DNA from: Octopus bimaculoides
Lineage: Eukaryota
DNA: 64,000 bases
Direction of reading: 5' to 3'
Assembly: GCF_001194135.2 (NCBI RefSeq)
Contig: NC_068992.1
Coordinates: 49,633,467 to 49,697,466, forward strand
The position numbers and the translations under genes are program-made. Shown one piece after another: positions 858-63,536 of the stretch (its first letter is position 1; the number at the start of each line of letters is the position of its first letter). The notes below the pieces were generated by a model. That model searched no databases and had not been told where the DNA came from. It saw nothing but the letters and a program-made list of their open reading frames with translations.

Positions 858-15618
<14,761 letters not shown>

Positions 15619-27600: not shown

Positions 27601-27984
27601 TTTTTAACCCCTAACCCTAATGCCAACTACTCCAAAAGTGTAATGGGTGCTTTTTACATGCCACTGGCACGGGTGCCATGACTACAATTTCATGGGTGCT
27701 ATTTACATGACACTGGCCATGACTGTGGGTTTCATTTGGCTTGACAAGTATTCTCAAGCCCAGCATATCGCCAAAGGTTACATCGCCTCTGTGAGGCCTG
27801 ACATTTGAAGATTATGCTCCACATCATCCCTCACCTCCATGAATCTCAACATTCGAGGATCATGCTACTGACAACGGCCACGATTACGATTTACATGACA
27901 CTGGCAATAACCATATATATATATATCGTCCAACCCATGCTAGCATGGAAAGCAGACGTTAAACGATGATGATGATGATGATGA

Positions 27985-28054
<70 letters not shown>

Positions 28055-31000
28055 CAATTAGAAAATGGAGGAGAATATGCTGTACTCAACGGCTTGCAGA
28101 CAGTGTATTACGTTGAATTAACTTATGACAAAAACCACAAAATACAAATTTTTTAATGACAAACCATGTTATATTAACAATCGGGGTTACAAATATAAAG
28201 AACATTAGGAATTTGAGAATAATCAGAAACTTACAGCTGTTTCAGCCTAGCGTTGGCATGCCCCATTCTATCTGAATAGCTCCTGCCGGAGTAATTAGCA
28301 GATGAAATGCTGAAATGGGGGTACATGCATGATTCGCTAGGCCTCTTCAGAGATCTCTGAAGAGGCCTATTTGTATTCAGTATTATGACCATACCTACCT
28401 GTACTGTATAATGTAACCATATTTTGTCTTGTGATTATATCTACCTGTGTTATGACTAGATCTACTTATACTGTGGCTATATCTACTTGTATTCTATTTT
28501 ATAGTTGTATTTACACTTCTGTTTTGTATTGTGACCATATCTGTCTATAGTTTAGAAAGCACTCTGCTCTGCCTTCATTTTTAATGATGTTCCTTTCTGC
28601 TTGAAATGAGTTTTCTCTGAATGATTTGCAGGCGAGGCTGAAACGCTTACGGAAAAAAAAATATGAAGAACGAGAAAAGGCTATGTCTTACAGGAAGGAA
28701 CTGCATCGGACATTGGATGATTGGAGGGATTCCATATCTCAGAAAGAACAGCAAATTAAACAGGTAAGGGATAATGATGATGACGATGAGGATGATGATT
28801 GTGGTGGTGGTGGTGGTGGTCGTCGTTTTTTTAAAAAAATTTTGTTTAGTTTGTTAGGTAAATTTTCTATTTCAATTTGACATGTTTAATAAGCTTTACA
28901 CAGTAATATGCATATTCAGAAATCTATCCTCTGTCCCCCCTCCCCTTTCTCTATTTTTCTCCCTTTAACTGCCTGATTACAAAACTAATATGTATATATA
29001 TATATATATATATCTATATATATATATATANNNNNNNNNNNNNNNNNNNNNNNNNNNNNNNNNNNNNNNNNNNNNNNNNNNNNNNNNNNNNNNNNNNNNN
29101 NNNNNNNNNNNNNNNNNNNNNNNNNNNNNNNNNNNNNNNNNNNNNNNNNNNNNNNNNNNNNNNNNNNNNNNNNNNNNNNNNNNNNNNNNNNNNNNNNNNN
29201 NNNNNNNNNNNNNNNNNNNNNNNNNNNNNNNNNNNNNNNNNNNNNNNNNNNNNNNNNNNNNNNNNNNNNNNNNNNNNNNNNNNNNNNNNNNNNNNNNNNN
29301 NNNNNNNNNNTATATATATATATATGTGTGTATATATATGTATATATATACTCTTAGAAAATAGGTACGTGTTGGGAAGGGCATTCAGCTGTAAAACAGT
29401 GCCTCAATGATATATTCATGTTACCTATAGGAACATGGGAAAGCTGGCATAAAAAAAATAACGAGTGATTATATATATATCATTGGTAAATCATAAATCA
29501 AAAAAAAAAAGTACACTCCAAGTTATAGAGCAGTGTAGTATAAAGATAGATAAGGCCGGTGTCTATGAGATAATCCCATAAACTGACCTTATCTATCTTT
29601 ATATATATATATATATATATATATCCAGGAGTTCATGGATATGACCACTCGGAAGGCCTCCGCGATGGTGGAGTTAGGATTTTAGGAGGGCGATTGGGAC
29701 CACGTGGATGAGGAAGGCGTGATCCAGAGAGGAGTGGACAGCGTGCTTACCCAACCATCTCATTCTTAGTCAACTGCCTTGTGTCCTACCTGTTGGCTTG
29801 GTTTGAAGAATCCATCTTGCTTGCCTTTCGTGTGACATTCTAATCACATGTCTGTAATACCAGAGTTGTGGCTAAATTCATGACAACACTTCTACATCTA
29901 TGTTGTTATGTCTGTGTACTTTTTTGTACAATCTTTGTATTGATTTAACTAGCAGGCATTGAAAAGGATATGACCATTGCTTCTATTGTCTCTTTTTCCT
30001 TTCTTTAACTAATTAAGGTGATGTTAATTAAAAGTTTAACAAAAATGATTCTTTCACACTGGGAATGTGGAACTGCAGTATTTCTTGGAATATTCTCTGA
30101 TATCTAACTGGTTTACTTGTATTTTTAGGAGAAAGAAATGAAAGTGGCAGTTGACTCAGTCCTGGGTGAAGTTCGTAAGAAGAAGTCTGATGTTGCCAAA
30201 ATGCTGGAACTGATTGGAAACCTGAGTAAACTGAGGAAAATCCGCAAAGAGAATGTTGCTAAGAAAGGTGTGTTTGCATGTTTCTTTTTTTTTTTTGTCC
30301 ATTTTGAGATGGGGAGAAGAAACCTTGTAATTTCTTATATCCTAGATTCCTGCATAAATCAGATGTTTCCACTCAAAAAATCTCATCACCTTTACCATTT
30401 CTTGAAGAATGTCATGTTTGAAACTACTTTCCATTGAGATATGTCAAGTTTATTGAAGCTTGAAGAAAATACCAATTCTATTTTTCTGATAAAAATTTAA
30501 CATTATTATTGGAATAACTTCAAACTTTAATTGCACAGTTAAATTATTAAGGTTCACCATCTAATCTACCTGCTTGTATATCTTCAGAGGTGGGCTAGAG
30601 TTTTTATTTATTTTTTATTTTCATAAAACTTTGGCAGTTGTTATTAACAACTACACCAACATCTTATAAAAGTGTAATTAATCCCCCTAAATCATGAGAA
30701 GATATGATTTATTTCTTTATTCTTAATGTTTTTGTTTTTCTCCTTCAGGCTTATATACATTATTCCATTCTGATAAGAAATTTGAGGAAGACATCTCTGG
30801 CTTACAAAGGATGCTGAATAACCAGATGGATGTCTATGAAGCAGAGCAGCGTACCCTTATGGTAAACCTATCATTATTCACCAGTTCACCTGCACACCAT
30901 TGTATTATATTTTCCTTCATTTGCTTTTTTTTTTTTGTCCCTTATACAGATCCTGTGTTAAATACTGAACATCACTGGTCAGTCAAAAATATTTCATGTT

Positions 31001-33973
31001 AAATTTTGGATTAGGTAGTCAGAAAGTGGAAAATAAAAATAATCCCCCTCTAGAAAAACAATTATGTGTTAGCAATCAGAAGGGCATCCAGTTATATTAT
31101 GCTTCAATGATAATACGTATTTATCTAACCCAGGGGTAGGAAACCTCCGCGAGCACATTCTATTGCACCTACAGGCCTATATATTTGCATATACAAAATA
31201 TGGAAATTTTCAATTGTATAATTTATACAATATTCATATGCCTATTTGCAGCAGAGGTTGCATTTCCACTACAATTTAAAATGGTTAGACTCGAACAGAA
31301 ATTGTTCCATTTGCATGGAAATTTTGTTTTCACTATAAAACAAATATTGCTAGGTTTGTACCACCTCCTTGAGACCCAACTACACTCTAGCTAAAACATA
31401 CAGAATACTGCATAAGTAATATAAATGTCCTAAATTCAGTGGCAGCTTTAATGAACTTAATTTAATGTGTTAAACTTATCTTTATTAATGTATATCAAAT
31501 TATACATAGATATATACAAGATTTACACAGATATGAGTTAGAACTCGTGGTCCACCCATGGACTTTTCCCATTGGAAATTTTTGCCCACTGCACTAAAAA
31601 GTTTCCCCACCCCTGGTCTAACCTATGCTAGCATGGAAAAACAAACAGTTGGAAAACAAGGATTGGTAACAGAGTGGGCATCTTGCCAAAGAATACTGCT
31701 TTAATAAGGCTTCTACAGATGATGGTAGGGGGAAAAAGTGAATGTAAAAATGGTGATGTCGATGATATATATAAAATTATAATCATCATCATTTTAAAGT
31801 TTGCTTTCCAAGTAGATGTGTGTGTGTGTGTGCTTGTTTGTTTGAAAAAGTGAATAAAAATATGATTTTTCTGATGATTATTTTCCACTTTAATGATTTG
31901 TAAGAATTTAATAACTAAAGTAGAAAATAATTATCAGAAAAGTTCTATTTTTATTCACTTTTTCAAATATACACTAACGCTCATGCTTTTAATGTGATGC
32001 TTTTTCTAAATAAATGTGTTTGTTCCTTGTTGCAGGTTATGCTGGAATGTGAACAGGAAGAGACCAAAGAACGTGAACGAGCAAAGTCACACAAAGTTAA
32101 GAAAGAAATTGAGAAGCGAGAGAAGAAACGCGAACTACAACTTCTGTTTGGCAAAGGTTTGTGGAAACATATTTTTGCGTTTAGCTAATATCCCTTTCTG
32201 GAACAACGCTCCTACACATAAACTTTGATTTCTTATATTTTAGTGATATGGACCAGGCCAGTGCTCAGCAACCCTTTTTCACTTATGGTACACTTATATT
32301 CTTTTCAAAATTCGATGGTACACCTAAACTAAAAATGTAACTAAAATGTTAGAGCTTGCTTGAAGCATTGTATATGATATGTGACATAGAAAGAGATAGA
32401 AGGCTAAACAATGTAAAATGGATTGGAAGATGAGGTAACGAAAATTAGAATTAAGTTACCCAGTAATCTTTGTTTTGTTTTTATTGTTGTTGCTGCTGTT
32501 CTTTCAACTGTCCAATATTTCAGGACGTAAAAATCCCTTCCTATTTTAAAAAGGTAGGTTGTAATTTGAGGAGTGGTATGGCTGCTGCTTTGAGCAGATT
32601 TAGCAACCACATAGAAAAACCCTTAATGGGTTGCCTGTTGTTACATTTGTGAAATAATTCTTACAGTGCCAGTAATTCTCAGGGTCTTTTCTTCCCCACA
32701 GATGTCATCGATTCAATGGATCCTTGTTACCCTTTCCTGAAATACTACACACAGGCCATTGACAATTGGGAGTCTTTTCTGCAGATTCGGTGAGTTTTTA
32801 CAACTGGAGCAATTGTGTGTGTGTGTGTAAACAGTAATGCTGGTGTGTGTATGTGTGGACAGTATGGTAGGTGTGTGTATGTGTGGACAGTATGGTAGGT
32901 GTGCGTGTGCAAAATGAAATATAAGAATGAAAGCTGAATGAAGAGAGAACAACTGTCTTTATTACTTTAATTTGCATTGTATTGGCTTTTGAATGAATAC
33001 ACACACACACATACAAGGGAGATCTGCAAAATTCCTGGCTTTAAGGATATCGCAAAAGGCATGGTTGGAGGCCCAACCTTCCAAGTCCTTTTACAGGGCT
33101 TGGAAAGACTGAAGGACTGCTAAGTGTGTGGATCTGAGAGGGGAATATCATCATCATCATCATCATCATCGTTTAACGTCCGCTTTCCATGCTAGCATGG
33201 GTTGGACGATTTGACTGAGGACTGGTGAAACCGGATGGCAACACCAGGCTCCAATCTAATTTGGCAGAGTTTCTACAGCTGGATGCCCTTCCTAATGCCA
33301 ACCACTCAGAGAGTGTAGAATATGTTGAATAAAATCATAACTGACGGATCCTCCTGTATTTTTTTTTACCCAAAGCCAGGAAATTTTCAGCATCTCCTTA
33401 TAACGTGTGTGTATTTGTTTTCTTGCATCTTCACATTAGTGATATGAGCATCTGTGACATTTGTCTCCCATAAGCATTATGTCCCATAGCTTGATGGTTT
33501 CATTTATTCTAACATAAAGACCAGTGGAATAAAAAAGAATCTTACTTGAAAAACAAGGGTTGGTGAGAGGAAGAGCATCCTGCACTTAAACACTGCTTCA
33601 GTGAGTCTTCTCCAACCCATACCTGATCATTCATAGATTATATATTCATTTTGAATGACTAGTTTTGATGACCACAATGCACTTTATTTTTTATATTTCA
33701 AAATAAGGTCTCAAATGAACACTGAAATCAAATTTTCATCTTTTTGTTTAATTAAAAAGTAATAACTTAAAATTAAATGTTACTGCTTTGTGAGATATAT
33801 AAATTTAAATACATATTTTTTACTCTCTTATTTTTCTTTTATGTCTTTATAGGAGAGACTGGGATTGTTATTTGGCACCAGAAACTGCACCCGGTGCCAG
33901 TCGGATCCCTGATACTTGGGTTTTACCTCCAGAACCTTCAAATCCAGCTTGGGCATGTTTTTTGGAAAGCTGA
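20394..33973 (+). CDS. PDCD7: Programmed cell death protein 7 (U11/U12 snRNP 59K); join(20394..21674, 22392..22535, 23099..23188, 28632..28763, 30129..30267, 30749..30861, 32036..32156, 32702..32789, 33853..33973); 2229 nt, 742 aa
   Basis: Pro-rich N-terminus, then a Lys/Glu/Arg coiled coil (EKEMKVAVDSVLGEVRKKKSD..LSKLRKIRK..G), then YYTQA..FLQIRRDWDCYL..GASRIPDTWVLPPEPSNPAWA, which matches the PDCD7 C-terminal family pattern. All introns are GT-AG and the phases are consistent. Confidence 0.93.
22392..22535 (+). CDS. PDCD7: PDCD7 exon 2
   Basis: IWESQNLVRQMLL..IRKIETTK; ttcag/gtaac. Confidence 0.88.
23099..23188 (+). CDS. PDCD7: PDCD7 exon 3
   Basis: ETLEDLRRKITDKNLIEELEKKMKARLKKR; tttgtag/gtgagt. 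Confidence 0.9.
25320..26410. repeat. Highly diverged intronic minisatellite (about 24-30 bp units, CACTGTTATAGCATATGTTGATAT-like)
   Basis: Recurring GTTATAGCAT / GTTGATAT / ATCACTG motifs; interrupted by a SINE B copy at about 25556-25775. Confidence 0.65.
27143..27308 (+). mobile_element. SINE/LINE-tail family C (RTE-type 3' end, (GAT)n tail)
   Basis: TTGGCATTAGGAAGGGCATCCAGCTG..CCAACCCATGCTAGCATGGAAAGCGGACGTTAAACGATGATG; copies at 17475, 27483, 33148, 53220. Confidence 0.82.
28632..28763 (+). CDS. PDCD7: PDCD7 exon 4
   Basis: ARLKRLRKKKYEEREKA..SQKEQQIKQ; ttgcag/gtaagg. Confidence 0.92.
29700..29930 (-). mobile_element. LINE reverse-transcriptase C-terminal remnant
   Basis: YRHVIRMSHERQARWILQTKPTGRTQGS*LRMRW resembles the RTE W.GHV.RM...R..K.....G.R.RGRP..RW motif. 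Confidence 0.55.
30129..30267 (+). CDS. PDCD7: PDCD7 exon 5
   Basis: EKEMKVAVDSVLGEVRKKKSDVAKMLE..KKG; tttttag/gtgtgt. Confidence 0.93.
30749..30861 (+). CDS. PDCD7: PDCD7 exon 6
   Basis: LYTYSHSDKKFEEDISGLQRMLNNQMDVYEAEQRTLM; cttcag/gtaaac. Confidence 0.92.
31131..31615. mobile_element. hAT MITE, 485 bp, inserted in a family C SINE
   Basis: TIR CAGGGGTAGGAAAC / GTTTCCCCACCCCTG; TSD ATCTAACC/GTCTAACC. Confidence 0.85.
32036..32156 (+). CDS. PDCD7: PDCD7 exon 7
   Basis: VMLECEQEETKERE..LQLLFGK; ttgcag/gtttgt. Confidence 0.92.
32702..32789 (+). CDS. PDCD7: PDCD7 exon 8
   Basis: DVIDSMDPCYPFLKYYTQAIDNWESFLQIR; cccacag/gtgagt. Confidence 0.93.
33014..33400 (+). mobile_element. Internally deleted mariner element with a nested family C SINE (33148-33317, TSD GAATA)
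   Basis: TIR-like AAGGGAGATCTGCAAAATTCCTGGCTTT / AAAGCCAGGAAATTTTCAGCATCTCCTT. Removing the SINE restores KCVDLRGEYVE*, a mariner-type C-terminus. Confidence 0.75.
33853..33973 (+). CDS. PDCD7: PDCD7 last coding exon
   Basis: RDWDCYLAPETAPGASRIPDTWVLPPEPSNPAWACFLES*; AATAAA at 34012-34017. Confidence 0.94.
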
Positions 33974-35217: not shown

Positions 35218-38200
35218 CTGAAAATAGAAGATTAAATTATTTGTTATCATTTGTTTCTCATTCAACATAATTAGAAGATAAGCAGTATACATTATTTCAG
35301 TATGTCCTATAAGGATGGAAAACTTGAGTTTATTCCAATAGGATTTGATTGGAGCTCACAAAACAATGGAATATAACCAAACACAATAGGGTATTTTATT
35401 AATTTTACCATTTAGGAAGCAAAGGCCATACATTTTGGGGTCAGAGGGAATTAATTTAGTTGACTCTGGAGCGTGTTTTACTGACCACTCTTACAGAAGG
35501 GTGAAAGACAAAGATGACTGTGACAAAAGTTGAATATTGCAGTGCATTGCTCTCTCACTCAATAATAATAATAATAATTACCTACCTGATTTGTGATTAT
35601 GACTGACAGCTAAATCCATAGCAGTCAGTTGATCTTCATTTGCCATGGTAAGATCAGCTCCTGCTTCTAGCAGTAACTTCACACAACTGGCATGGTTATT
35701 GTTGACAGCATACATCAATGCTGTGTTACCACTCTGAAATAATAATAACAATAATAATAATAATAATAATAAAAATAATAATAAACAGTTCTCTTACATA
35801 AAAGAAAAAAACAAAATGACTTTAATGCAGCAGTGTGCATCCCAGTTCAAGGTGGCGCATGCAGTGAAGAGATAGTTGCAGCTGTCTTTGCCTGATGTTT
35901 TCGCTAACTTTTGGCAGGTCTCTGTAATGGCTTTCATTTGTCATATGTTGCTGCCATTTCACACTTAAGCATCTTTGTGTAGCAGCCATTTAGCCTGTTT
36001 GATAATTTCTTTGTCAGTGTCCATGTTTCACCGCTATATAATAGCAGTATTATGCAAAGGACATGCATGGAACTGCAAAAGAAACGCGAGATGTGTGTGT
36101 CTGTGAAATATGTTTTAATTTCATTATGTCAGAGATAAATTTTGATAAATCTGATAAAGTCAATTTCTTGGGATGCACTTTGACCACAGTCCATGGGTCA
36201 CTGACATGTGTTCTGGTAGTAGGTGGATCCAGCACATTAAGATTGTAGGGCATGACATGTTCAATACTGCGTATGCTCTCCCTGGGTGTTCAAAATGGCC
36301 ATACACTGTCGGTACACAGAGTGCATGAGGTGGTTCACAAAAGCCATTGGCACCTGTGTCCACACCTTGAGGAAAGATGCTTCCAGTTCCACACGAGTTG
36401 TCAGCCTTGGGACCACTTGGTTCAGCTGTCTCTGGATTTCATCCCACAAGTGTTCAACTGGGTTCAAATCCGGGCTGAGAGCCGTCCACAGCATGGTTCT
36501 CATGTTGTGCTGATGCAGGAAGTCCATATCTTGGAATATTTACACTTACATCCCCGAAATAAATTTTCAAAATTTACCATATAAAAATGACATTTGGAAA
36601 AATCGCATTTCTTTTAAGGTTCAGTGTATATAGTGTTAAATACCTTTAAACGAGTGAATGGTCATAGTCATAAAGGAATCTAACACTATATGTGTCCTTC
36701 CCATTATACATCAATAGTTTATCATGTTAGACTCTATGTTACATCATTTAACTTACCTCATCTTTGGTACCACTTTCTACCATATAATTCATCTTGTCTA
36801 TGGTACCTTGTCTCTGTAACATATAACTAACCTTTGTATGGCATCTCATCTTCATAACATTATATCACTTAATCTGTGGTACCTCTTCATGTGACATCAT
36901 ACAACTTACTTCACCTATAATAAACTAGTCTTTGTAACATCACATAACTTACCTCGTCTACATAGTTCACTTCCATACCAAGTTTCAGAAGTAGTTTTAC
37001 TATATCAATGTAACCATAGCAACAGGCAAACAGTAAGGCATTTTCACCCTTGTTTCCCTGCGCATATGGATTGGCACCGTTTTGCAGCAGATATTCCACT
37101 GTCGCTAACTGGCCATTAGCTGCAGCCCACAGTAGAGCAGTCAAACCTTGTTCATCAGGTTTATTTATGTTGAGATCTGGAAATACAACAAAGAAGATAC
37201 AAAAGATGTAATTCAATTTTCTTTTAATATGACTTTTTGGGTTTGTGTCAAGACAGGGTACTAATGATGTCCTCTATCAGATAAGACAACTGTAGGAGAA
37301 GTTCTTAACTAAAAGTAAGTCACTATATCTATCATTTGTTGATCCACTATATCTATCGTTTGTTGATCCATTGTCAGAGTACCACACTGTGGTCTTCAAG
37401 AATATTATGTGGAGTGGAATGGTTTGTGGGAGCTGTGAAAACCACGTGCAAAGACGTTGCCAAGAAGGTGTGAGTTGGTAATGAAGAGTAGTGGCTGTAA
37501 GTTCAAGTTACAATCTTTAAGGTGGACGTAGCCAACTAATTATTTTGTTGTTTCTCACAGGCTCAACAGTACATTTAATCTGCTTCGCCAAGAAAAGCAG
37601 TGTGGTAGTTATGGTATGTCATATGGGGTACATTGTGATGATGAGTGTATGTTGTAAGAAGTATATTATGTGGGACACAGTGTAACATTTAGTGAGTCAT
37701 GTGTGTTTGAGGACAGCTTAGTGAGGTAGAATACATGAAAGTTTGTGTGGTGTGTAATGAGGTAGCCAGAACAGGTGTGAGGTAAAGTATAGCTATGATG
37801 ATGATGATAATGGTGTTGATGACGATGATGACAGTGATGATGATGATAGACAATAATAAACAAACCATTAGTGATAATAACAGTGCTGTTAACAATGTGG
37901 ATTAATATAAAAAAAAAACATTTCCAAATGTGACAATGATGATGATGATGGGACAAGTAACATCCTACTTCAACCATCATCATGATGATGATGACATTTC
38001 TACTTAAACCAGTGACTAACAACTTACAACTCTTCCAAAGTGAGTATAAAAACAATTACTCACTGTCGGTGGACTCCTGCCAGAGAAGAACCAGTTCTCC
38101 TTGTGCAGCTTTCTGGTGAATACTGATATCTGTAAAAAAATGTAAAAAAAATGTCATCAAAAAAAGTTTTCCTGGGGCTGATCTGTGCCTTTTGATGTGT

Positions 38201-41995: not shown

Positions 41996-43779
41996 TCCAA
42001 GGCTTACATCAGGTGCATCTTACGGAGTTTCTACCTACGCCTTTTTCTACAGATCGAACAGGGCCATATACCTGAAGGGATTTGTGATTTTTCTGCCTTC
42101 CTACTTACTAAGACTTTGGTTTTTACTAGTTTAACTCTAGGGTCCTTCGATTCTAGGCCTTGCTTTCACACCTGGAACTTCTCTATACACGCACAAACAC
42201 ATATATATCTTTTACTTGTTTCAGTCATTAGACTGTGGCCATGCTGGAGCACTGCCTTCAAAATTTTTTAGTCAAATGAATTGACCTCAGTACTTGTTTT
42301 TTAAAGTCTGGTACTTATTCTATCGATCTGTTTTGTTAAACTGTTAAGTTACATGGACGTAAACGCAGTAACCACGTGAACCCGGAACCATGTGGTTGGG
42401 AAGCAAACTTCTTACCAGACAGCTACGCCAAAATAATTACTGAATATGTGTGTGTGTGTATTCGTGACCCAATACATAATGTTTGGCAGTGTTCTGACGA
42501 CTTGAATTACATGGTAGGTAGCTCGTCTTTCCAGTTAGCTAGAGTTATCTCCCCTTTACATAAAGTCATTAGAATGTTCTCGTTGCTTATTTATATTCTT
42601 TTTTTTATTAATAAACACATAGGAATATGTACTTAGATATATGGACGGAGTATTGAAATAGCCATAGCTATCGGTACTTCATGGAGAAGGAAAAGGGAAA
42701 GGAATTTCGATGAGATTTTCTTTTTATCCTTCTTCTTTTAGTATTCCTGTATTACATGTTTATCTTTAAATTTGGAACTTTCATCCTTTGTTTTATATTT
42801 AATCATAATGAGCTTACTGCTACAGTGATTAGGTGCTTTTCGTACAAGAAAGTTACGAGTGAAATAATTTTTGTGCTTGAATTTTTTTTTACATTACTCT
42901 TCGCCCTTTTCTTTCCCTAAAAAGTAGGGATAACCATTTCAAAACTCTGCTGTTAACAAGTATAAAATAAAAACTTAAAAAAAAAAAAATCACACATCCG
43001 ACTGTAAACGTTTCGAGCAATAAATTTCATATAGCAAATACTATATATATGCATTCATTATACATTATGAAATCGCGAGGTTTGACAGCTGAAGTCATGT
43101 TTACGAAAAAAATTTTTTTTAAATCTAAAACTTCACTCCTAATATTGACAAACAATCACATCGATTTTAAGTCTAAACTTGGTGTCTGCAACGTTGTTGG
43201 TACCCAGCTTTAAACATTGCTTCCAAAATCCATAAGTAGTCTTTTCTTTTTCTTTTTTTTTCTTTTAGTTAACCAAACAAACTGAATGTCATAAAATTGT
43301 CAAAAGATCAAAGATAATCAGATATGCCGACTGACCAACCACACACACATATTCAAGTCTCATGACGGGCAATTAGTGTCGGACAACTACACACACATAC
43401 ACACGAGAATGATATATATATGTATCTAAGTGTGATTACCTATCCCTAATATTAAGAAATTTACTTAGGTTTTTGTTATGTGTCATTTATGGTTGAAATA
43501 GATAGAATTGTCAAAAAATGTTTACATACGCGCACAAAACCAAATACATATGCATTTACACACACATGCATGAAAAGAATATGTGTAAATAGATAGATAG
43601 ATAGGCAAAGAGAGATAGATAGATAGATAGATGATAGATAGATAGATGGATGGATGTATACGGTGAAGACACCAGCTTACGAAATAAATAAAAGCACATC
43701 TTCGAACAATAACACTTACAGGATGGAATAAGAAACTGATGAATGAAATAAAAAAATTGATCTAATCAATCAGCAATGC

Positions 43780-43910
43780 AGTTATTAAAGCAGAACCTAT
43801 TAATAACTGTACCAGAAGCGTTTCCGTACAACTTTTAACACGGGGTTATTTCATTGGCTGAGATCTATTAACGCATGCGTACTATCATAAGCAGGTTAGA
43901 TTCGCTACTG
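43780..43910. promoter_or_regulatory. Probable bidirectional promoter shared by ANKRA2 and SERF
   Basis: Reverse CCAAT (ATTGG 43853-43857) and palindrome ACGCATGCGT (43871-43880). The SERF ATG is 130 nt downstream. A minus-strand donor gtaagt lies at 43719-43714. Confidence 0.55.
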
Positions 43911-44010
43911 AGCAGAGGTGAGAGTTGTGGGTGAGCAAAAAGAACAATATCATCGAAAGCGAAGAGATCTGCTGTTGTTTGGAAAGAAGTGAATGAAATA
44001 GAGAGAGGAA

Positions 44011-44017
44011 ATGAGTC
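44011..44017 (+). CDS. SERF2: SERF coding exon 1 (7 nt, ATGAGTC)
   Basis: Perfect gtaagt donor; phase 1 completes CGT (Arg) with exon 2. Confidence 0.85.
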
Positions 44018-45435
44018 GTAAGTTGCTCATTGAACGTTTTTTAAGGAATACTATTTTTATATTATATTCATATTTTTTTATTTACTTGTGTTATTTCTAT
44101 GTTTATAGGTGTTTCTTTTTCTTCGAAATAACAATTATCTCCGCCCGCCATGTTTTGTCCTACATTTTGTCCTACATTTCATCGTCATGTCATTTTCGCT
44201 TTCTTTCTTTCTCTCTCTCTCTCTCTCTGTTATATTCTCTCTTTTCTGTATAATAAATTCAGATACTCTCTCTCTATATATATATATATATTCTCACACA
44301 CTGTAGTTTTTGTAGTATATATATATATATACGCACACTGTATTCAAATAGTATACTTTATACACACGCACACACACACACATGTATATTGACTTGGGGA
44401 AACAAAATGACTGAAATAAGTTTTCCCCACACCGATCAGTTTTCTTTGAGCAAAGTAAATTTGTTTATATTGTGTGTCTATTGCAGTATATTCGCACCCT
44501 TTTTGGGACATATTCTGTTTCGATATTCTGTTAATGTTTCCAATTTTCCACAGACCCAGTGCCAGTAAAGTGCTTGTGTATGTACTTATGTATGTATAAG
44601 CTTATATATANNNNNNNNNNNNNNNNNNNNNNNNNNNNNNNNNNNNNNNNNNNNNNNNNNNNNNNNNNTATATATATATATATTACTGGAGATAAGTCTG
44701 GAACAAACGTCGTTTGTATTTTCACACTAGCTAATAGATAAACATACAGTGTTTTTTTTAATTCATTCTCAACGCAAAAACAAGACTACAAGAAGTGAAG
44801 GATTTCAAAGTCAACAGGAAACAAATCTGAAGACAAAGTGTTTGATGTCGTCTAGGAAATAAAGGTCTGTCCCCTAACTAACAGTAATTTTGTAAGGTCC
44901 TAGATTGTTTTCTGGACTTTTGAAAGATTAAAAGCAATGCTGACCTGGCGGTGAGGATATTCTGATCGGAGACAAAGGAAATTTGCATCTGTCATTTTTT
45001 GACATCCACCGCCCCCCTGGAAGGTATACAAGGTGTTTGTCTACATATATTTTGTAGTGTGTATACACACACATACCGTTTATACATATTTTATATGTAC
45101 ACACACATATATACGCACATATATGCATGCACACAGGTGTTTTTATATATATGATACACATACACACACACAACACTCACACGCACACATTCTCTTGGTG
45201 ATTTTGATAGCTTATCTATATAGATATATATGTATATATGAACCCAGCTAATAACATGTCTTGTGCAAGTCGCTTATTGTGATTGCTTTGAAACGGAACC
45301 TTTCAGATAATAAACAGCTGATAACTTTTATAGGAGAAATATACGAGTACCATAAGAGTATTTTGGACCCACTTATTTTAGTAACAAAAAGTATTTGGTA
45401 ACTCCTGTGATTATCAGCGGCTTCCACTGAATGTG

Positions 45436-45487
<52 letters not shown>

Positions 45488-48400
45488 ATGTGTGTGTCTG
45501 TGTCGGTGTGTGTATATATATGTATGTATGTAATGTTGAGTATAAAGTAATGATTAACTTTGGATCTATGTATATGTGTCTACCAAATGTTATAATTTAA
45601 TTAGACTTATCTAAAATACACATTTTTCTTTTTGCACTCTTATTAAATCACTTACGCACTCGATGTTCTTACATTTAGGAATTTGTAGGAAGTGGTTAGT
45701 TTTCGTAGTTTGACCTCTTGTCATCGTTGGAATCTTGTGGACTACACCAATGATAATAATTGACGGAGTTTCAGATCACTTTCCCTGGATTTTGTCATTT
45801 AAATTTTTCCCCGTGTGTGTGTGTGTTTAAAGAAATGTTTAAAAACCCTGAACATTATGATTTATCAAAATTTCAACTTTTCTCCGTTAGTTTTTTATTT
45901 TTGTTGACATTATCCGGTTTTTCGTTTTCTCCATTTTTGTGTGTTTGAAATATCGGAGATACGATTCTCCTAATCCTTTCAGAAAATTTCTAAACTTTTA
46001 TCGCTTCAATCTCTTTTTCGAATTAAAAAAACTGTTTGATTAAACATTAAAAAAAAAATTCTTGACGAACACGAGCGTAATAAAGAAAACATATATGAGA
46101 TTATTTATTAGTCCCCCACTGTCAACGTTCTGAAGAAGTCTTAAACTTGCATGTGTAGAAGAGAATGGACACGCGTAATCTCTCAATACAAGTGACGAAA
46201 TGCTTTACCCTCTCAGTCCTTGGCCCCTATGTCTAACTTTACCCTTTACCTGGGCTCTTGAACAAAATAACAAATAGTTGTATACACAGCCCAGTAGTAA
46301 ACTATTGCTAGGCCTATCTCTCAACTACCGTGTATGTTCATTACAGGCAAACTCTTTCTCACACACACAAATACCAGAGAATAACAATAATAGAGGCCTG
46401 TCTTTCAACTAACGTATTTGACCCGAATCATTCATTCTCTGCGTAAGGCCAAACTCATCGTCCGGAAATTACCATCAACAACTTCCTCAACTGTAAGGAG
46501 TCTGGGCCTTGTTCGTTTACCAGGCTAAGTGTTGGGTTCGTTATACGCTCGTTTCATCGCAAGAATCTTTTTTTTTTCTTTTTCTCGATTAAAAACAAAA
46601 GTCAACTTTAACTCTGGGGGAACGCCATTAACAATGAGTCATAAACACATTTGACAACAAAGCAAAAAGGTGATCAGTTGTCTTTTTGTGTTTTTAGTGT
46701 TTTATTTTTTCTTTTCTTGTGTTGTTCAATTACCACTTCAATGGGAAACCAATAGAGATTACGGTGGCGGAGGTAAAGAATGCGCACACCACCCGTTTTC
46801 GGCGTAACCGTAAACCTAATCACCGAAAACGAGTGATGTGCGTATTCTTTACCTTCGCCGATTACGGTTAGGCCATTGCTGCTTTACTGGGAACCAGGTT
46901 GCGATAGGGTTAAGTTAAGGAACTTTATGCGAGAGGTTGAGATAAGAGGGCAACGGAAAGTAGGTTCCTCCCCCTTTTACAGTAATTGTGACATGTCATC
47001 TTATTGCCTACGTCACTTTTGAGGTTTTGGGTGGAGTTTGGAACTGAGAGACCCATCACATTCACATACATCCTCTCTCTCTCTCCGTCTTTGTGATGCT
47101 ACTGCTGTTTTTTCTCCATTTTCTCAGCATTGTTGCCTATTAAGCATTTTTGAGCAAGTTAACAGGAAAATCAGCACTTTTTTTTCATTATTTAGCACTT
47201 TTAGCAGAATACACATGTACACAGCTTGTCAGGAATTTTGAAATAATATTTCATCCAAATTTAAACTAATAAAAACATTTTTGTAACTTTATAACTGGAA
47301 ATATTTAGGACTTTTGACACTCTGTGAAGAGAAATGACTGATTAGAACAATTGTCCAAGACTGTGCATTGATATTTGCCAGTTATACTTGTTTTTCAGTA
47401 AGTTGTTTCATAACTGAAATTATTATTATTATTTTAAAGAATTTTGCCTTCAAATTACATGGTGTTGGGTTCAGTCCCACTGCATGGCATCTTGGGCAAA
47501 TGTTTTTTCTATTGTAGCTCTTGGCTAAATACAGCTTTGTGAATGGATCTGGTTGGTGGAAACTGATTGAAGCTCATCGTATAATTGCATGTATACGTAT
47601 GTCTTCATGTTTGTTCCCTACCATTGCTTGAGAACTGATATTGGTTTTTGTTTACATCTCTGTAGCTTAGCAGGTCAGTAAAATAGCCCAATAGAATGAA
47701 TGCCAGGCTTTAAAAATATGTACTGAGATCGATTCATTCAACTTAAACCTGGCAAGGCAGGACCCTGGCATCACTGAAACAAAAGATAAAAGAAAGAATC
47801 TCCCTTTTGCTTTTGCTGTTTTTGATAATGCAAGAAAGTAGGAAAGCACATCAGATTTGGAAAGTAATTGCTTACTGTGCTGATAATATTAAGTGGCTGT
47901 TAGGAGGTGAGCTGGTGGAGTCGTTAGCATGCCAGGCAAAATGCCTAGAGCATTTTGTCCATCTTTACATTCTGAGTTCAAATACCGCTGGGTGCATTGC
48001 AAACTTTGTAGATGTGTCATCATTGCAAAATATTTTGTTAGTAAACCATTACTAAACGTAAAGTTGCATAGAACAATAGTTCTATTTGAAGCAATTCCTG
48101 TTAAGAAATTTCTTGAAAGAAAACATGAAATCTTGATGTTCAAGCCTGTAGCTACAGCAAATATTCTGCTCAATACCACAGATTGCTTGTCAGTTGCTTG
48201 ACCTTAACCAGTTGAGCATGTCCCTTAGTGGCTGATGATATGTGCATCTCTGATCATGAGCAAAAGTGGTGGAGGAGCATCATAGCCATGTGTTGAGAGG
48301 AATTCTTTGGGATTTGGATAATTCACCTTTCATAACCTGGGTGTTTTGTTCAACATCCTTAAACAACCCATATTCACGGACCATTTGAGTGGGATGGGCT

Positions 48401-50773
48401 ACTCGACCTGAAGAAAATTCTAATTGGGCCCCACCTGCACGGTGCTAAACTTGACCTAATATTGAGCAAATTTGGGGACAAATTTATTTTATTCCGAAGT
48501 TGTTACTGGAGGAACTCCCTTTGTAGATATTGGCAGCATTTGCTCTTAACTTTTTAATGTCCTGAAATTCAAATGTTTTGATAGAAAGTCTATTAAGTAG
48601 CACAAATATTTTAACAAACCCAAATTGAGAAATACGATGGAATTGCTCACTCTGTGAAATGTGGTCTGTAACTACCTGACAAATGCTGCCAAGATTGTTT
48701 ACTTGAAGTAAAATTAGTACAATAGTTACCACTTTGTAACACCATAAATACTGAAAACTTATATTTGTTGGAAGTGGATTAAGATATGTTAGCAAAGTTC
48801 AAATATATATTTTTCTTTTTGTTGTTTAATAAACTAGCATTATTTTTTCTGAATATATTTTTAGCACCCTTTTGCAGAAAGTCTAGCTTAAAACTGCAAT
48901 TTTCCTTAGCAACACTACTTTCCAGGTGTGTTATGACTTAGTAACTTGTTCTCTCTATTTTGGTGTTGAAGTTGCTGCTTTTAAACCTGGATTTTAAGTC
49001 TTATATTATGCTCCATTCCTTTTAATGATTTTCAAATTTTCGTTTTGAAGACCAGATTCAGAATCTGTCCTGATCCTCCAAATTTTTTTAATAAACTATA
49101 TGAAAAGCCGTTTCTTTTTTTTTTTTTTTAACAATAGGCACAGGTGTAGTTGTATGGTAAGAAGCTTAATTCCCAACCACATGGTTCTTGATTCAGTTCT
49201 CAGATTGGTAGATTTGATAGACGGAAACCTTTTGTTCATAACTTATCTATGTGTGTATGTGTCTTTGTGTCTGTTTGTCCCTCACCACTGGTTGACAACT
49301 GGTGTTTGTGTGTTTACATCCCTTTAACTTAGCAGTTCCGCAAAAGAGACCGATAGAATGTGTACCAAGCTTAAAAACAAAACTAAGTGCTGGGGTCGAT
49401 TTGTTCAACTAAAAATTCTTCAAGGTGGTGCCACAGCATGGCCGCAGTCTAATGACTGAAACAAGTAAAAGATAAAAGATTATAGTAAAGGAATCTTGAT
49501 CCAGTCTTTTGTATATCTATCGGAATAAAGAACATGGGAAGCAAACTTCTCAACCACACAACCACATCAGAGCTGATGTGAAGGCTTTCTTGCGAGTATC
49601 TTATAAAACACACTTGAGCTAAGTTTTCTGCATAGACAGAAGCTGAAACCCTGTTTGAACTGCATTAAGTAATTTGAAGGCTGATCCTTGTCATAGTGTT
49701 CAGGTACATGTGTCTGCAGAATATATAGTAGGTCAGTTGATCAATCAATTTGAACTCTGATTTGCATAAACTCGTGTGTGCGTGTGTGTGTGATTCATTT
49801 ATATTCATATTGCTGTAGATGATGTATTATTAGTGGAGAATGAGGATATTGTGTGTGTGTGTGTATGCACACATTTGTTGTAATTTCAGCATGTTGAAAT
49901 AAATATTTTCTTGAAATTCCAGGTGGTAACCAAAGAGACAAAGCCCGGCAGAAAAATTTGAAAAAGCAAGAAGAATCTCGAAAGAAATCTACAGCTGATA
50001 AGAAAACTGGCAATAAGGGAATGACACTTGAAGAACGAAGACATAGGTAATGACCTGTTTTTATATTTTGTTTCACTTTAACTACAACTTAGTTAACTGA
50101 AGTATTTAGTTATAGATTCTGTTAGATTGTACAAGAAGTATATAGGGAAGTAGAGCATGGGCACTTTGATGTGGCACAACCATGAGTACCTTACACCATC
50201 AGAAAGGTTCAGCGTCCTGAGTTGGTTATTCAGTACTTCATCCCATATATTTTTGATCATTTATCTCTACCTTTCCCTGTGTTATTTGTTAGGATCAGGT
50301 GCCTTGTATTTTTTCTATTTGCTGGTCCCATGTTGATGGATATGAGTATGTAAATCCATATAAAAAAAAAACATACATGACCTTGCAGCACGGTCATGTA
50401 AACACAAGCGATGGTCAGTGCATTATGCGTAGCTGAGCATTGTGGTTATTCACTGGGGTGCATTTTTGTGCTACCAGCAGACAACAGCGACCCCATGGTA
50501 TCACTGATCAATTCATAAGCTTAGCATTGTGAACAATGTTAAGCTTATGGATTCACGTTATCCTGGATTAATGATGGATGAATTGTGGTAAATGATGCTA
50601 TATGAACATATAGGCGTAGGAGTGGCTGTGTGGTAAGTAGCTTGCTTACCAACCACATAGTTCTGGGTTCAGTCCCACTGCGTGGCATCTTGGACAAATG
50701 TCTATTACTATAGCCTCAGGCTGACCAAAGCCTTGTGAGTGGATTTGGTAGATGGAAACTGAAAGAAGCCCGT

Positions 50774-51270: not shown

Positions 51271-51661
51271 CTTTGTCTTCTTGCCTTCACATCGCTTGAT
51301 ATTTGTAAGTGAATGTTGTCATCATGTAAGTGGTGTAATGTTTCCAGTCTTCGATGAAAACATGTCTCGTCATGGGGAAATATTATCTTACTTGGAAACA
51401 GTTGAATGTTTATGACAGGAAGGACATCCTCTTGTCGAAAACTACCATGACACATTCTGTCTGCCGCATGCAAATATGGAAAAGTAACTGTTAAAATGAG
51501 AATGTTGATGATGTATGTTTTTGATTGCTGAATTTATTGGTTGGTTCTAAATTTTTACTTTTTATTACTTTCCTGATTTTAGAGATGCTGACATAATGCG
51601 TAAAAAACAAGAGAAGAATAAAGCCACGGAACCAGCTGGATCTGCAGTTGCTGAAAAATAG
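44011..51661 (+). CDS. SERF2: Small EDRK-rich factor (SERF1/2 family, 4F5 domain); join(44011..44017, 49923..50046, 51583..51661); 69 aa
   Basis: MSRGNQRDKARQKNLKKQEESRKKSTADKKTGNKGMTLEERRHRDADIMRKKQEKNKATEPAGSAVAEK*, matching the 4F5 signature M.RGNQR..ARQKN.KK..RD.EIM..KQ. First exon is ATGAGTC|gtaagt. The symbol is family-level: this is a single pre-duplication homolog. Confidence 0.93.
46766..46859. other. Long imperfect inverted repeat (37-bp stem, 20-nt loop); candidate structured RNA or pre-miRNA
   Basis: Arms 46766-46802 and 46823-46859 pair at 33/37 positions by Watson-Crick, plus 2 G.U and 2 C.A. Confidence 0.8.
49137..49480 (+). mobile_element. SINE family A copy
   Basis: Homology to 4261-4669, including the GACTGAAACAAGTAAAAG tail. 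Confidence 0.82.
49923..50046 (+). CDS. SERF2: SERF coding exon 2
   Basis: GNQRDKARQKNLKKQEES..EERRHR; ttccag/gtaatg. Confidence 0.95.
50613..51087 (+). mobile_element. SINE family A copy (contains an assembly gap)
   Basis: GGCGTAGGAGTGGCTGTGTGG head; homology to 4261. Confidence 0.85.
51583..51661 (+). CDS. SERF2: SERF coding exon 3
   Basis: DADIMRKKQEKNKATEPAGSAVAEK*; ttttag acceptor. Confidence 0.92.
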
Positions 51662-60853: not shown

Positions 60854-61510
60854 GGATCTATTTCAAAACGGGGGCACCAGTATTTTCTTAACGAAACACT
60901 AACGAAACACTTTGAAACTTGGGACACTGGTAGAATGTGTCATATAAAACATATTTTACTCTTAGTCTTCTTAACAAAAAAAAACGTACATCGCAAGTTA
61001 TTCCATGTTAAAGTTGTCGTATTTCTGTAATTTCAACCAATCACTGACGTCTATTCAGCTGAATGGAGTTACTGCTGGGCGGTCATAAAAATGTTATTCC
61101 CTGTGACATATTTCATCCGGTTTAATCGTAATTTATACGCATATATTGTTTATATAATAAATTACGCTGTGCGTATCTATGTGTGTAACAATTTTAGAGT
61201 TCGGATTCTAGAGTTAGGGTTAGTTTTAGGGTTAGGGTTAGGGTTAGGGTTAACAGTCTAGTTAGGGTTAGGGGATTAATACGATATACACCGTTACAGC
61301 GCTAACTGTTTTCAACTGAATAGACGTCAGTGATTAGTAGAAATTATCGAAATAAGACAATTTTTTACATGAAATAAATTCGAATACAAAAATTTTTTTC
61401 TGTTCTATAACACAAAATAGATAAGTATACAAAGTTTGAAAGTCTTTCGGTACCAAAAACACTACATAAAACATAAATGAAAACTGGTGCCCCCGTTTTG
61501 AAATAGATCC
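60854..61510. mobile_element. Young Merlin-type MITE carrying (TTAGGG)n
   Basis: Perfect 28-bp TIR GGATCTATTTCAAAACGGGGGCACCAGT; perfect 8-bp TSD CATTCGTT; 5'-GG termini. Confidence 0.88.
61214..61274 (+). repeat. Interstitial telomere-type TTAGGG repeats
   Basis: Four consecutive TTAGGG units plus flanking partial units. Confidence 0.92.
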
Positions 61511-63409: not shown

Positions 63410-63536
63410 CAGGGTGTCCACAAAGTCTGGGTACATGAGGATTAACACATACTTTAAGAAATTATTATTTCTTATATTTAATTGTTTATGTTATGATTTT
63501 ATTTACTCCATGTACCCAGACTTTGTGGACATCCTG
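63410..63536. mobile_element. Tc1/mariner-type MITE, 127 bp
   Basis: 28-bp TIR CAGGGTGTCCACAAAGTCTGGGTACATG (1 mismatch); TA on the right flank. Confidence 0.85.

What the first reader, a model, noticed from the sequence alone, without database searches (positions are those of the whole stretch)
46757..46873. GC-rich 37-bp-stem hairpin in SERF intron 1, interlocked with a repeated ATTACGGT(TA) motif
Seen: left arm GGCGGAGGTAAAGAATGCGCACACCACCCGTTTTCGG (46766-46802) and right arm (46823-46859) pair at 33/37 positions. On the SERF-sense strand the rest are 2 G.U and 2 C.A pairs, and the loop is 20 nt. GATTACGGT sits directly before and directly after the stem. The loop holds TAACCGTAA (46805-46813), which is exactly complementary to the downstream TTACGGTTA (46862-46870), so a pseudoknot or alternative fold is possible. 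There is no TSD and no second copy in the window. Known: coleoids have greatly expanded miRNA repertoires and heavy ADAR editing, and A:C mismatches in long stems are favoured editing sites. Here both candidate A's (46832, 46836) have a disfavoured 5' G. Inference: a lineage-specific intronic pre-miRNA or structured RNA, an ADAR substrate, or a protein-binding palindrome of an unknown element.
Basis: partly seen in the sequence, partly recalled or inferred. Interest (0 to 1): 0.75.

Follow-up and report, generated by a model that had tools for sequence, protein, structure and literature searches.

The report
Old palindromic insertion in SERF intron
The hairpin is real and shared by two octopus species, but it looks like the decaying scar of an old palindromic DNA insertion, with a 9-bp target duplication and a loop copied from the neighbouring flank, and nothing here shows it to be a selected RNA gene.

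Summary
Arms 46766-46802 and 46823-46859 pair at 33/37 around a 20-nt loop, and the element lies in SERF intron 1 on the sense strand. GATTACGGT occurs only twice in 64 kb, and the two copies abut the two arm ends exactly, which is the layout of a 9-bp target-site duplication. The "interlocked" motif has a DNA-level explanation: the loop is an inverted copy of the right junction (arm end plus flank GATTACGGTTAGGCC). This is clearest in Octopus vulgaris, where the 14-nt loop matches at 13/14. That pattern fits a templated insertion made during break repair at the centre of a palindrome. The whole structure sits at the orthologous site in O. vulgaris, so it is older than that species split. All four arm changes since the split break or weaken pairs, none is compensated, and the arms are not clearly better conserved than the flanks. 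No Rfam family reaches threshold. The proposed pseudoknot fails on geometry and energy. No second copy exists in about 100 kb of octopus DNA, and genome-wide copy number could not be tested. Best reading: a relic of a TIR-only, MITE-like insertion that is co-transcribed and may be edited passively by ADAR. This is ordinary, of low interest.

The parts
46757..46765 (.). Left copy of the 9-bp direct repeat GATTACGGT (candidate target-site duplication)
   Evidence: An exact repeat that abuts the left arm. It occurs only twice in the window and is identical in O. vulgaris at L001 12758-12766.
46766..46802 (.). Left arm (candidate terminal inverted repeat), GGCGGAGGTAAAGAATGCGCACACCACCCGTTTTCGG
   Evidence: The O. 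vulgaris arm matches at 37/37 but carries one extra C.
46803..46822 (.). Spacer or loop, CGTAACCGTAAACCTAATCA: an inverted copy of the right junction, with a window-specific 6-nt gain
   Evidence: (I2). The O. vulgaris spacer CCTAACCCTAATCG matches rc(flank) CCTAACCGTAATCG at 13/14. With the adjoining arm bases the inverted match is 21 nt with 2 mismatches (L001 12804-12824 / 12849-12869). Chance probability is about 2e-5.
46823..46859 (.). Right arm (candidate terminal inverted repeat), CCGAAAACGAGTGATGTGCGTATTCTTTACCTTCGCC
   Evidence: O. vulgaris carries 3 clustered substitutions here (CTTTACCTT to CTTCAATTT), none compensated in the left arm.
46860..46874 (.). Right copy of the direct repeat (46860-46868) plus the next 6 nt, GATTACGGTTAGGCC: the inferred template of the spacer
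   Evidence: The spacer also matches TAGGCC, which lies beyond the 9-bp repeat, so the right flank is the source and not the left.
44011..44017 (+). SERF exon 1 coding part (ATGAGTC, then a GT donor): context only
   Evidence: It is identical to the annotated O. vulgaris gene start at L001 10001.
49922..50047 (+). SERF exon 2: context only, defines the 3' end of intron 1
   Evidence: 100% to UniRef A0A0L8H6S5, residues 4-44.

Best explanation
The feature is the relic of an old DNA insertion: a 94-bp element that consists only of two 37-bp inverted termini, flanked by a 9-bp target-site duplication (GATTACGGT). In form it is a TIR-only, MITE-like or foldback element in unique intronic DNA.

The spacer was not part of the original element. 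It is a templated filler copied in inverted orientation from the right junction (arm end plus GATTACGGTTAGGCC).

The proposed mechanism is inferred. A palindrome with little or no spacer broke at its centre, leaving two 3' tails that both end in ...TTTTCGG. The minus-strand tail snapped back on its own CGAA (4-bp microhomology with TTCG). It copied C+GATTACGGTTAGGCC, then annealed through CC/GG to the other tail. This model predicts the spacer CCTAACCGTAATCG. O. vulgaris has CCTAACCCTAATCG. The window species later gained 6 nt by slippage in this TTAGGG-like text, plus 2 substitutions.

The insertion and the filler both predate the split between the window species and O. vulgaris, and both have since drifted.

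Because the element lies in SERF intron 1 on the sense strand, it is transcribed as a 37-bp duplex and may be edited passively by ADAR. No selected RNA function is indicated.

Shown: the hairpin, the direct repeat, the inverted loop-flank copy, the orthologous presence in O. vulgaris, and the lack of covariation. Inferred: transposon origin, centre break, snap-back synthesis, and neutrality.
For: An exact 9-bp direct repeat abuts both arm ends. It is unique in 64 kb, is the same in O. vulgaris, and is the only such case among comparable hairpins. The arms have no similarity to anything else in the window or L001, so they are foreign to the locus, while the flanks 46000-47420 are unique DNA. 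The spacer is rc of the right flank: 13/14 in O. vulgaris and 21 nt with 2 mismatches when arm bases are included, with chance probability about 2e-5. The match runs past the 9-bp repeat into TAGGCC, which points to a local copying event. The 4 arm-to-arm differences are shared by both species, so they predate the split. The post-split changes are 3 clustered substitutions, a 1-nt insertion, and a 6-nt indel plus 2 substitutions in the loop. These weaken the stem from -68.8 to -60.6 kcal/mol with 0 compensatory pairs. Arm identity between species is 71/74, against 92.3% and 91.3% in the 300-nt flanks, which is not clearly higher. Snap-back synthesis with microhomology and inverted templated insertions is a documented repair outcome (PMC5728401). 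Centre-break palindrome revision is cited in PMC3300023. Other small TIR elements occur in the window, for example 63410-63536.
Against: No second copy of the arms was found and no empty site was seen, so transposition is not demonstrated. Octopus genomes could not be searched by DNA. Peptide-level searches of the open frame across the element found nothing. That fits a unique sequence at least as well as a repeat family, and there was no control for it. All arm changes since the split fall on the O. vulgaris lineage and none in the window lineage. All 8 arm CpGs are intact in both species, which could hint at constraint, although local CpG o/e is about 1 in any case. The snap-back steps were chosen after seeing the product.
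Confidence: 0.55

Rival explanations
1. An octopod-specific intronic pre-miRNA or other Dicer substrate processed from the SERF pre-mRNA.
For: It is a stable hairpin on the sense strand of an intron. Its stem length, about 35 bp, is close to a pri-miRNA stem (my knowledge). It is present in both O. vulgaris and the window species, which was the criterion for calling a novel octopus miRNA (PMC9699675). No arm change has occurred in the window lineage.
Against: No Rfam family reaches its gathering score. The only notable hit is the plant family MIR5998 at 38 bits against a gathering score of 180, which is a generic long-hairpin match. There are 0 compensatory pairs, and O. vulgaris has lost or weakened 3 pairs and gained a bulge. 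Twelve seed-site 7-mers for plausible 5p and 3p products are absent from the target tables of the octopus miRNA paper. That is weak evidence, because the file was truncated and holds no precursor sequences. The stem is near-perfect and GC-rich with no bulges, and it carries a TSD, as a young transposon-derived hairpin would.
Confidence: 0.07
2. A selected ADAR target or dsRNA element: the duplex recruits ADAR to the SERF pre-mRNA and has a regulatory role in splicing, retention or dsRNA sensing.
For: It is a 37-bp duplex with two A:C mismatches in a transcribed intron. According to PMC9699675, most octopus A-to-I editing lies in introns and 3'UTRs where hairpins are enriched.
Against: Both mismatch A's have a 5' G, a neighbour ADAR disfavours (established knowledge). 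There is no covariation, and no conservation above the flanks. Passive editing of any long duplex is expected and does not imply function. No RNA data were available here.
Confidence: 0.1
3. It is not a transposon. The palindrome arose locally by fold-back or template-switching replication, or by capture of foreign DNA at a staggered break, and the 9-bp repeat and the inverted spacer are by-products of the same complex repair event.
For: The spacer is certainly a templated copy of the flank. In the same intron, 450 bp downstream, O. vulgaris has a young 83-nt-arm inverted duplication of local unique sequence whose 11-nt spacer is the inverted native flank. This shows that fold-back events happen here without a transposon. 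No other copy of the arms was found.
Against: No simple inverted duplication of any one native segment produces the order repeat-arm-rc(flank)-rc(arm)-repeat; I worked through the junction types by hand. The arms match nothing nearby. An exact direct repeat at both outer junctions is the classic sign of insertion at a staggered cut.
Confidence: 0.2
4. A protein-binding DNA palindrome or regulatory element at the edge of the promoter-proximal CpG-rich domain.
For: The hairpin sits at the 3' edge of a zone with CpG o/e of about 1 (43000-46999). Beyond it, o/e falls to 0.1-0.4. Neighbouring blocks are 94-97% conserved between species.
Against: 37-bp arms are far longer than known binding palindromes. 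One arm has decayed in O. vulgaris. Nothing ties the CpG boundary to the hairpin itself.
Confidence: 0.03

Closest known systems
MITEs and foldback-type non-autonomous DNA transposons (class II, TIR order)
   Same: Small size (94 bp), no coding capacity, long terminal inverted repeats that make up nearly the whole element, an exact flanking direct repeat, and a location in a gene intron. A 9-bp TSD falls in the range known for Mutator-like (9-11 bp) and Merlin (8-9 bp) superfamilies (established knowledge).
   Different: No family was shown: there are no other copies, no autonomous partner and no empty site. The internal sequence is a copy of this locus's own flank, which a dispersed family consensus would not carry.
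Templated insertions from snap-back synthesis-dependent microhomology-mediated end joining (PMC5728401; polymerase theta-type repair)
   Same: A short insert (14-16 nt) that is the inverted copy of sequence close to the junction, with 2-4-nt microhomologies at both joins.
   Different: This is an ancient germline event inferred from two genomes, not an observed repair product. The polymerase and pathway in cephalopods are assumed.
Centre-break palindrome revision (Cunningham et al. 2003, cited in PMC3300023)
   Same: A palindrome whose centre has been rewritten into an asymmetric spacer. The spacer stabilises the palindrome, and both arms end at the same position.
   Different: The earlier state with little or no spacer is hypothetical, and the mechanism was described in mammalian cells.
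Transposon-derived miRNA hairpins (for example the human mir-548 family from Made1 MITEs; from my knowledge)
   Same: A MITE-like palindrome transcribed within an intron gives a ready-made hairpin of roughly pri-miRNA size.
   Different: There is no small-RNA evidence, no family, and no structural conservation here.

Membership tests
MITE / non-autonomous TIR transposon | Terminal inverted repeats at both ends | tested here: met
   37-nt arms, 33/37 complementary
MITE / non-autonomous TIR transposon | Target-site duplication of fixed length directly flanking the TIRs | tested here: met
   The exact 9-bp GATTACGGT abuts both ends and is unique in the window. It is the same in O. vulgaris.
MITE / non-autonomous TIR transposon | Small size, no coding capacity | tested here: met
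   94 bp. The only open frames are incidental and have no homologues.
MITE / non-autonomous TIR transposon | Multiple dispersed copies forming a family | tested here: inconclusive
   No other copy in 64 kb plus 36 kb of octopus DNA. No octopus genome could be searched by DNA. Peptide searches were empty.
MITE / non-autonomous TIR transposon | Empty site (one copy of the target, no element) in a related genome or allele | tested here: not met
   The one relative obtained, O. vulgaris, has the filled site. More distant octopods could not be fetched.
MITE / non-autonomous TIR transposon | Autonomous element with the same termini | not testable with these tools
   This needs whole-genome searches of octopod assemblies.
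Animal miRNA precursor (MirGeneDB-type criteria) | Hairpin with at least 16 paired nt between the arms | tested here: met
Animal miRNA precursor (MirGeneDB-type criteria) | Reads from both arms with homogeneous 5' ends and 2-nt offsets | not testable with these tools
   No small-RNA data were available. The paper's supplements hold no precursor sequences.
Animal miRNA precursor (MirGeneDB-type criteria) | Match to a described miRNA family | tested here: not met
   No hits at Rfam gathering scores. The best sub-threshold hit is MIR5998, 38 bits against 180. 12 candidate seed sites are absent from the octopus target tables.
Animal miRNA precursor (MirGeneDB-type criteria) | Structure maintained in a second species | tested here: inconclusive
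   The hairpin is present in O. vulgaris but weaker (-60.6 against -68.8 kcal/mol), with 0 compensatory pairs.
H-type RNA pseudoknot (loop pairs with 3' flank) | Both helices can form together and add stability | tested here: not met
   The loop-flank helix is -16.2 kcal/mol against -58 for the hairpin. A 2-nt linker would have to span a 37-bp helix. The complementarity is explained by DNA copying.
Templated insertion (snap-back SD-MMEJ scar) | The insert matches nearby sequence in inverted orientation | tested here: met
   13/14 in O. vulgaris, or 21 nt with 2 mismatches including arm bases
Templated insertion (snap-back SD-MMEJ scar) | Microhomology at primer and rejoining sites | tested here: met
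   Read directly from the sequence: TTCG/CGAA (4 nt) and GG/CC (2 nt). This was identified after the fact.
ADAR substrate | Long duplex in a transcribed RNA | tested here: met
   A 37-bp predicted duplex in SERF intron 1, sense strand
ADAR substrate | A-to-G differences between RNA and DNA | not testable with these tools
   No RNA-seq access

The most novel reading that the evidence does not exclude
The palindromic insertion has been taken over by the host. It has been kept for tens of millions of years in SERF intron 1 as an octopod-specific source of small RNAs, or as an ADAR-recruiting duplex that tunes SERF pre-mRNA processing in neurons. On this reading the zero arm changes in the window lineage and the intact CpGs would be signs of constraint.
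Probability: 0.1. Interest if true: 0.5.

Novelty: new member of a known kind. Interest (0 to 1): 0.2.

Why it matters
If the reading is right, the finding is ordinary genome archaeology: one more transposon-like palindrome in a cephalopod intron. It has two modest points of interest. First, it is a clean natural example of a palindrome whose centre was rewritten with a templated copy of its own flank, and O. vulgaris has a second, young fold-back duplication 450 bp away. Together they suggest this intron could be used to study palindrome birth and stabilisation in cephalopod germlines. Second, such insertions are the raw material from which new hairpin RNAs (miRNAs, ADAR substrates) can arise, and cephalopods are known for both. 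For scanning practice, complementarity between a loop and a flank, and direct repeats at the foot of a stem, should be read first as DNA-repair or transposition signatures before a pseudoknot is proposed.

Tried and rejected
- **Public DNA collections.** I scanned for a 21-nt arm pattern. Viral and prokaryotic genome contigs gave 0 hits. Metagenomes gave 1 hit, and it does not extend beyond the 21-mer, so it is chance.
- **Peptide searches.** I searched the frame that is open across the element, as a proxy for other copies. There was no candidate in the word-indexed search and no hit in the 1.84-billion representative search. I had no control showing that octopus repeats are represented there, so this is weak evidence.
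- **More distant cephalopod loci.** I tried to reach them through the neighbouring ANKRA2-like gene. The hits were exon-sized calls. One 12.9-Mb ENA contig at 71% amino-acid identity has no arm-like sequence within reach. One Logan contig is only 1.5 kb. Both loci could not be opened in the script environment.
- **Exact look-up of a neighbouring 67-aa ORF.** This was meant to find Logan contigs covering the hairpin. Nothing is on record.
- **Octopus miRNA paper supplements.** They hold no precursor sequences (the let-7 control failed), so the absence of arm strings says nothing. Seed-site 7-mers were also absent.
- **Idea rejected: the loop and flank match only because both are telomere-like (TTAGGG) text.** The motif is telomere-like. 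However, the 13/14 match includes non-telomeric bases and continues into the arm, so the loop was copied and is not a coincidence of shared motif.
- **Idea rejected: a simple inverted duplication of one native segment.** No such duplication gives the observed order of junctions.
- **Idea rejected: a snoRNA.** There are no box motifs in a usable arrangement and no Rfam hit at E<=10.
Full report
**Observation**

The sequence is as described. Arms 46766-46802 and 46823-46859 are 37 nt long, 89% complementary, and separated by 20 nt. As RNA, 46740-46890 folds to -68.8 kcal/mol on the + strand (z = -8.8) and -68.1 on the - strand, and none of 200 shuffles is as stable. The four mismatched positions are all transitions. 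On the + strand they give two G.U pairs (46770/46855, 46782/46843) and two C.A mismatches (46789/46836, 46793/46832). A 2:2 split is what random transitions would give, so it says nothing about strand or selection.

GATTACGGT occurs exactly twice in 64 kb, at 46757-46765 and 46860-46868, touching the two arm ends. The loop-flank complement TAACCGTAA/TTACGGTTA is real and extends to 13 nt with one mismatch. No other arm copy exists in the window at up to 3 mismatches or by short-word BLAST.

**Context**

- The window encodes a SERF protein on the + strand: ATGAGTC|GT at 44011-44017, exon 2 from 49922, and exon 3 at 51581-51658.
- The product is 100% identical to UniRef A0A0L8H6S5, an Octopus entry. 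That this accession series is O. bimaculoides is my own knowledge.
- The hairpin is therefore in intron 1, on the sense strand, 2.75 kb from the start codon.
- An ANKRA2-like ankyrin gene lies head-to-head upstream.
- CpG o/e is about 1 from 43000 to 46999 and falls to 0.1-0.4 beyond 47000.
- The DNA from 46000 to 47420 is unique within the 100 kb I hold.

**Comparison with a second species**

The annotated O. vulgaris SERF gene (OX597825.1, locus L001) aligns with the window at 84-92% in non-coding DNA. The hairpin is at the orthologous place (L001 12767-12855), and both GATTACGGT copies are intact.

- The four arm-to-arm differences are shared by the two species, so the palindrome was already old at the split. 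PMC9699675 puts that split at about 50 My.
- The left arm of O. vulgaris has since gained one C.
- Its right arm has three clustered substitutions (CTTTACCTT to CTTCAATTT).
- The loops differ by 6 nt and two substitutions.
- Comparing each arm with its partner places all four arm changes on the O. vulgaris lineage.
- One of these changes turns a G-C pair into G-U, two break pairs, and one adds a bulge. None is compensated: 0 of 33 consensus pairs changed on both sides.
- The O. vulgaris fold is weaker (-60.6 kcal/mol).
- Arm identity between species is 71/74, against 92.3% and 91.3% in the 300-nt flanks, so there is no clear extra conservation.

**The direct repeat**

In a scan of the window and L001 for non-low-complexity hairpins with arms of at least 20 nt and loops of at most 80 nt, this is the only one with a flanking direct repeat longer than 1 nt. 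The arms match nothing nearby, so they are foreign to the locus. The simplest reading is an insertion at a 9-bp staggered cut.

**The 'interlocked' motif**

The loop is an inverted copy of the right junction. In O. vulgaris the 14-nt spacer CCTAACCCTAATCG differs at one base from rc(flank) CCTAACCGTAATCG. With the adjoining arm bases the inverted match is 21 nt with 2 mismatches (L001 12804-12824 against 12849-12869).

The match covers TAGGCC, which lies beyond the 9-bp repeat, so the template was the right flank. A random 14-mer reaches 13/14 against any nearby 14-mer with probability of about 2e-5.

At each position where the two species' spacers differ, one of them agrees with the flank. 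This gives an inferred ancestral spacer identical to rc(flank). The window species added ACCTAA, a one-unit slip in TTAGGG-like hexamer text.

**Mechanism (inferred)**

1. A palindrome with little or no spacer broke at its centre, leaving two 3' tails that both end ...TTTTCGG.
2. The minus-strand tail folded back, with TTCG pairing to its own CGAA at arm positions 3-6.
3. It copied C+GATTACGGTTAGGCC.
4. It then melted and annealed by CC/GG to the other tail.

This gives arm + CCTAACCGTAATCG + arm, which is the length seen in O. vulgaris and its sequence apart from one base. Snap-back synthesis with microhomology is a documented source of inverted templated insertions (PMC5728401). Stabilising rearrangement of palindrome centres is the "centre-break" mechanism (cited in PMC3300023). 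The steps were chosen after seeing the product, so I hold the copying as near-certain and the exact path as plausible.

**RNA hypotheses**

- **Rfam.** No family reaches its gathering score anywhere in the window. Under the permissive threshold the best hit is a plant family, MIR5998, at 38 bits against 180, which is a generic long-hairpin match.
- **Pseudoknot.** The loop-flank helix is worth -16.2 kcal/mol against -58 for the hairpin. Its two strands sit at opposite ends of a 37-bp helix joined by 2 nt, so a pseudoknot is excluded and an alternative fold is negligible.
- **miRNA.** The octopus miRNA paper's supplements hold no precursor sequences. Twelve seed-site 7-mers for plausible products are absent from its target tables, which is weak evidence.
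- **ADAR.** Editing cannot be tested here. A 37-bp duplex in a pre-mRNA is a likely passive ADAR substrate on general grounds. Both A:C adenosines follow a G.

**Copy number**

This could not be settled. Only prokaryotic, viral and metagenomic DNA collections can be scanned, and they gave nothing beyond one chance 21-mer. Peptide searches of the frame open across the element were empty. Attempts to reach further cephalopod loci failed.

**Verdict**

The feature is real and old, and it is best explained at the DNA level. It is a TIR-only, MITE-like palindromic insertion with a 9-bp target duplication, and its centre was refilled from the flank. It now drifts inside SERF intron 1. Its novelty is low: a new member of a known kind. 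The reading that it has been taken over as a small-RNA or editing element is not excluded, and I give it about 0.1.

Noticed in passing
L001 13230-13406 (O. vulgaris); window 47225-47319: O. vulgaris has an inverted repeat with 83-nt arms, 99% complementary, and an 11-nt spacer. The spacer, TGTCAAAAGTC, is the reverse complement of the sequence that follows the single-copy arm in the window (GACTTTTGACA). The two-species alignment breaks exactly here. This is either a young fold-back duplication or an assembly artefact.
   Followed up: partly
window 61010-61364: An inverted repeat (68-nt arms, 82% complementary) encloses a run of telomere-type TTAGGG repeats at 61208-61273.
   Followed up: no
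window 63410-63536: A 127-bp element with 28-nt terminal inverted repeats that begin CAGGGTGTCCACAAAGTCTGGG. It looks like a Tc1/mariner-type MITE.
   Followed up: no
window 27239-27622: Two inverted copies of a SINE-like repeat with trinucleotide tails form a 69-nt-arm inverted repeat. CCCTAACCCTAA lies just downstream at 27609.
   Followed up: no
window 28989-29350: The top-ranked 'palindromes' of the window span the N run at 29031-29310 and are artefacts of the Ns.
   Followed up: yes
window 43000-50500: There is a sharp change in CpG observed/expected: about 0.9-1.1 from 43000 to 46999 (apart from about 0.6 at 44500-45499), then 0.1-0.4 from 47000 on. This suggests an unmethylated promoter-proximal domain that ends just after the hairpin.
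   Followed up: no
window 46400-46600 and 47100-47300: These intron blocks are 96-98% identical to O. vulgaris, against 77-95% in most other 100-nt bins of the same alignment. They may be conserved non-coding elements.
   Followed up: no
window 36261-36527 (-) and 36911-37216 (-): A Tc1/mariner transposase remnant ORF (with a DLNPVEHLW motif) lies next to an exon of an ANKRA2-like ankyrin-repeat gene. That gene sits head-to-head with SERF.
   Followed up: partly
window 31835-31973: An AT-rich hairpin with 64-nt arms (86% complementary) and an 11-nt loop lies next to a (TG)n run, with no flanking direct repeat.
   Followed up: no
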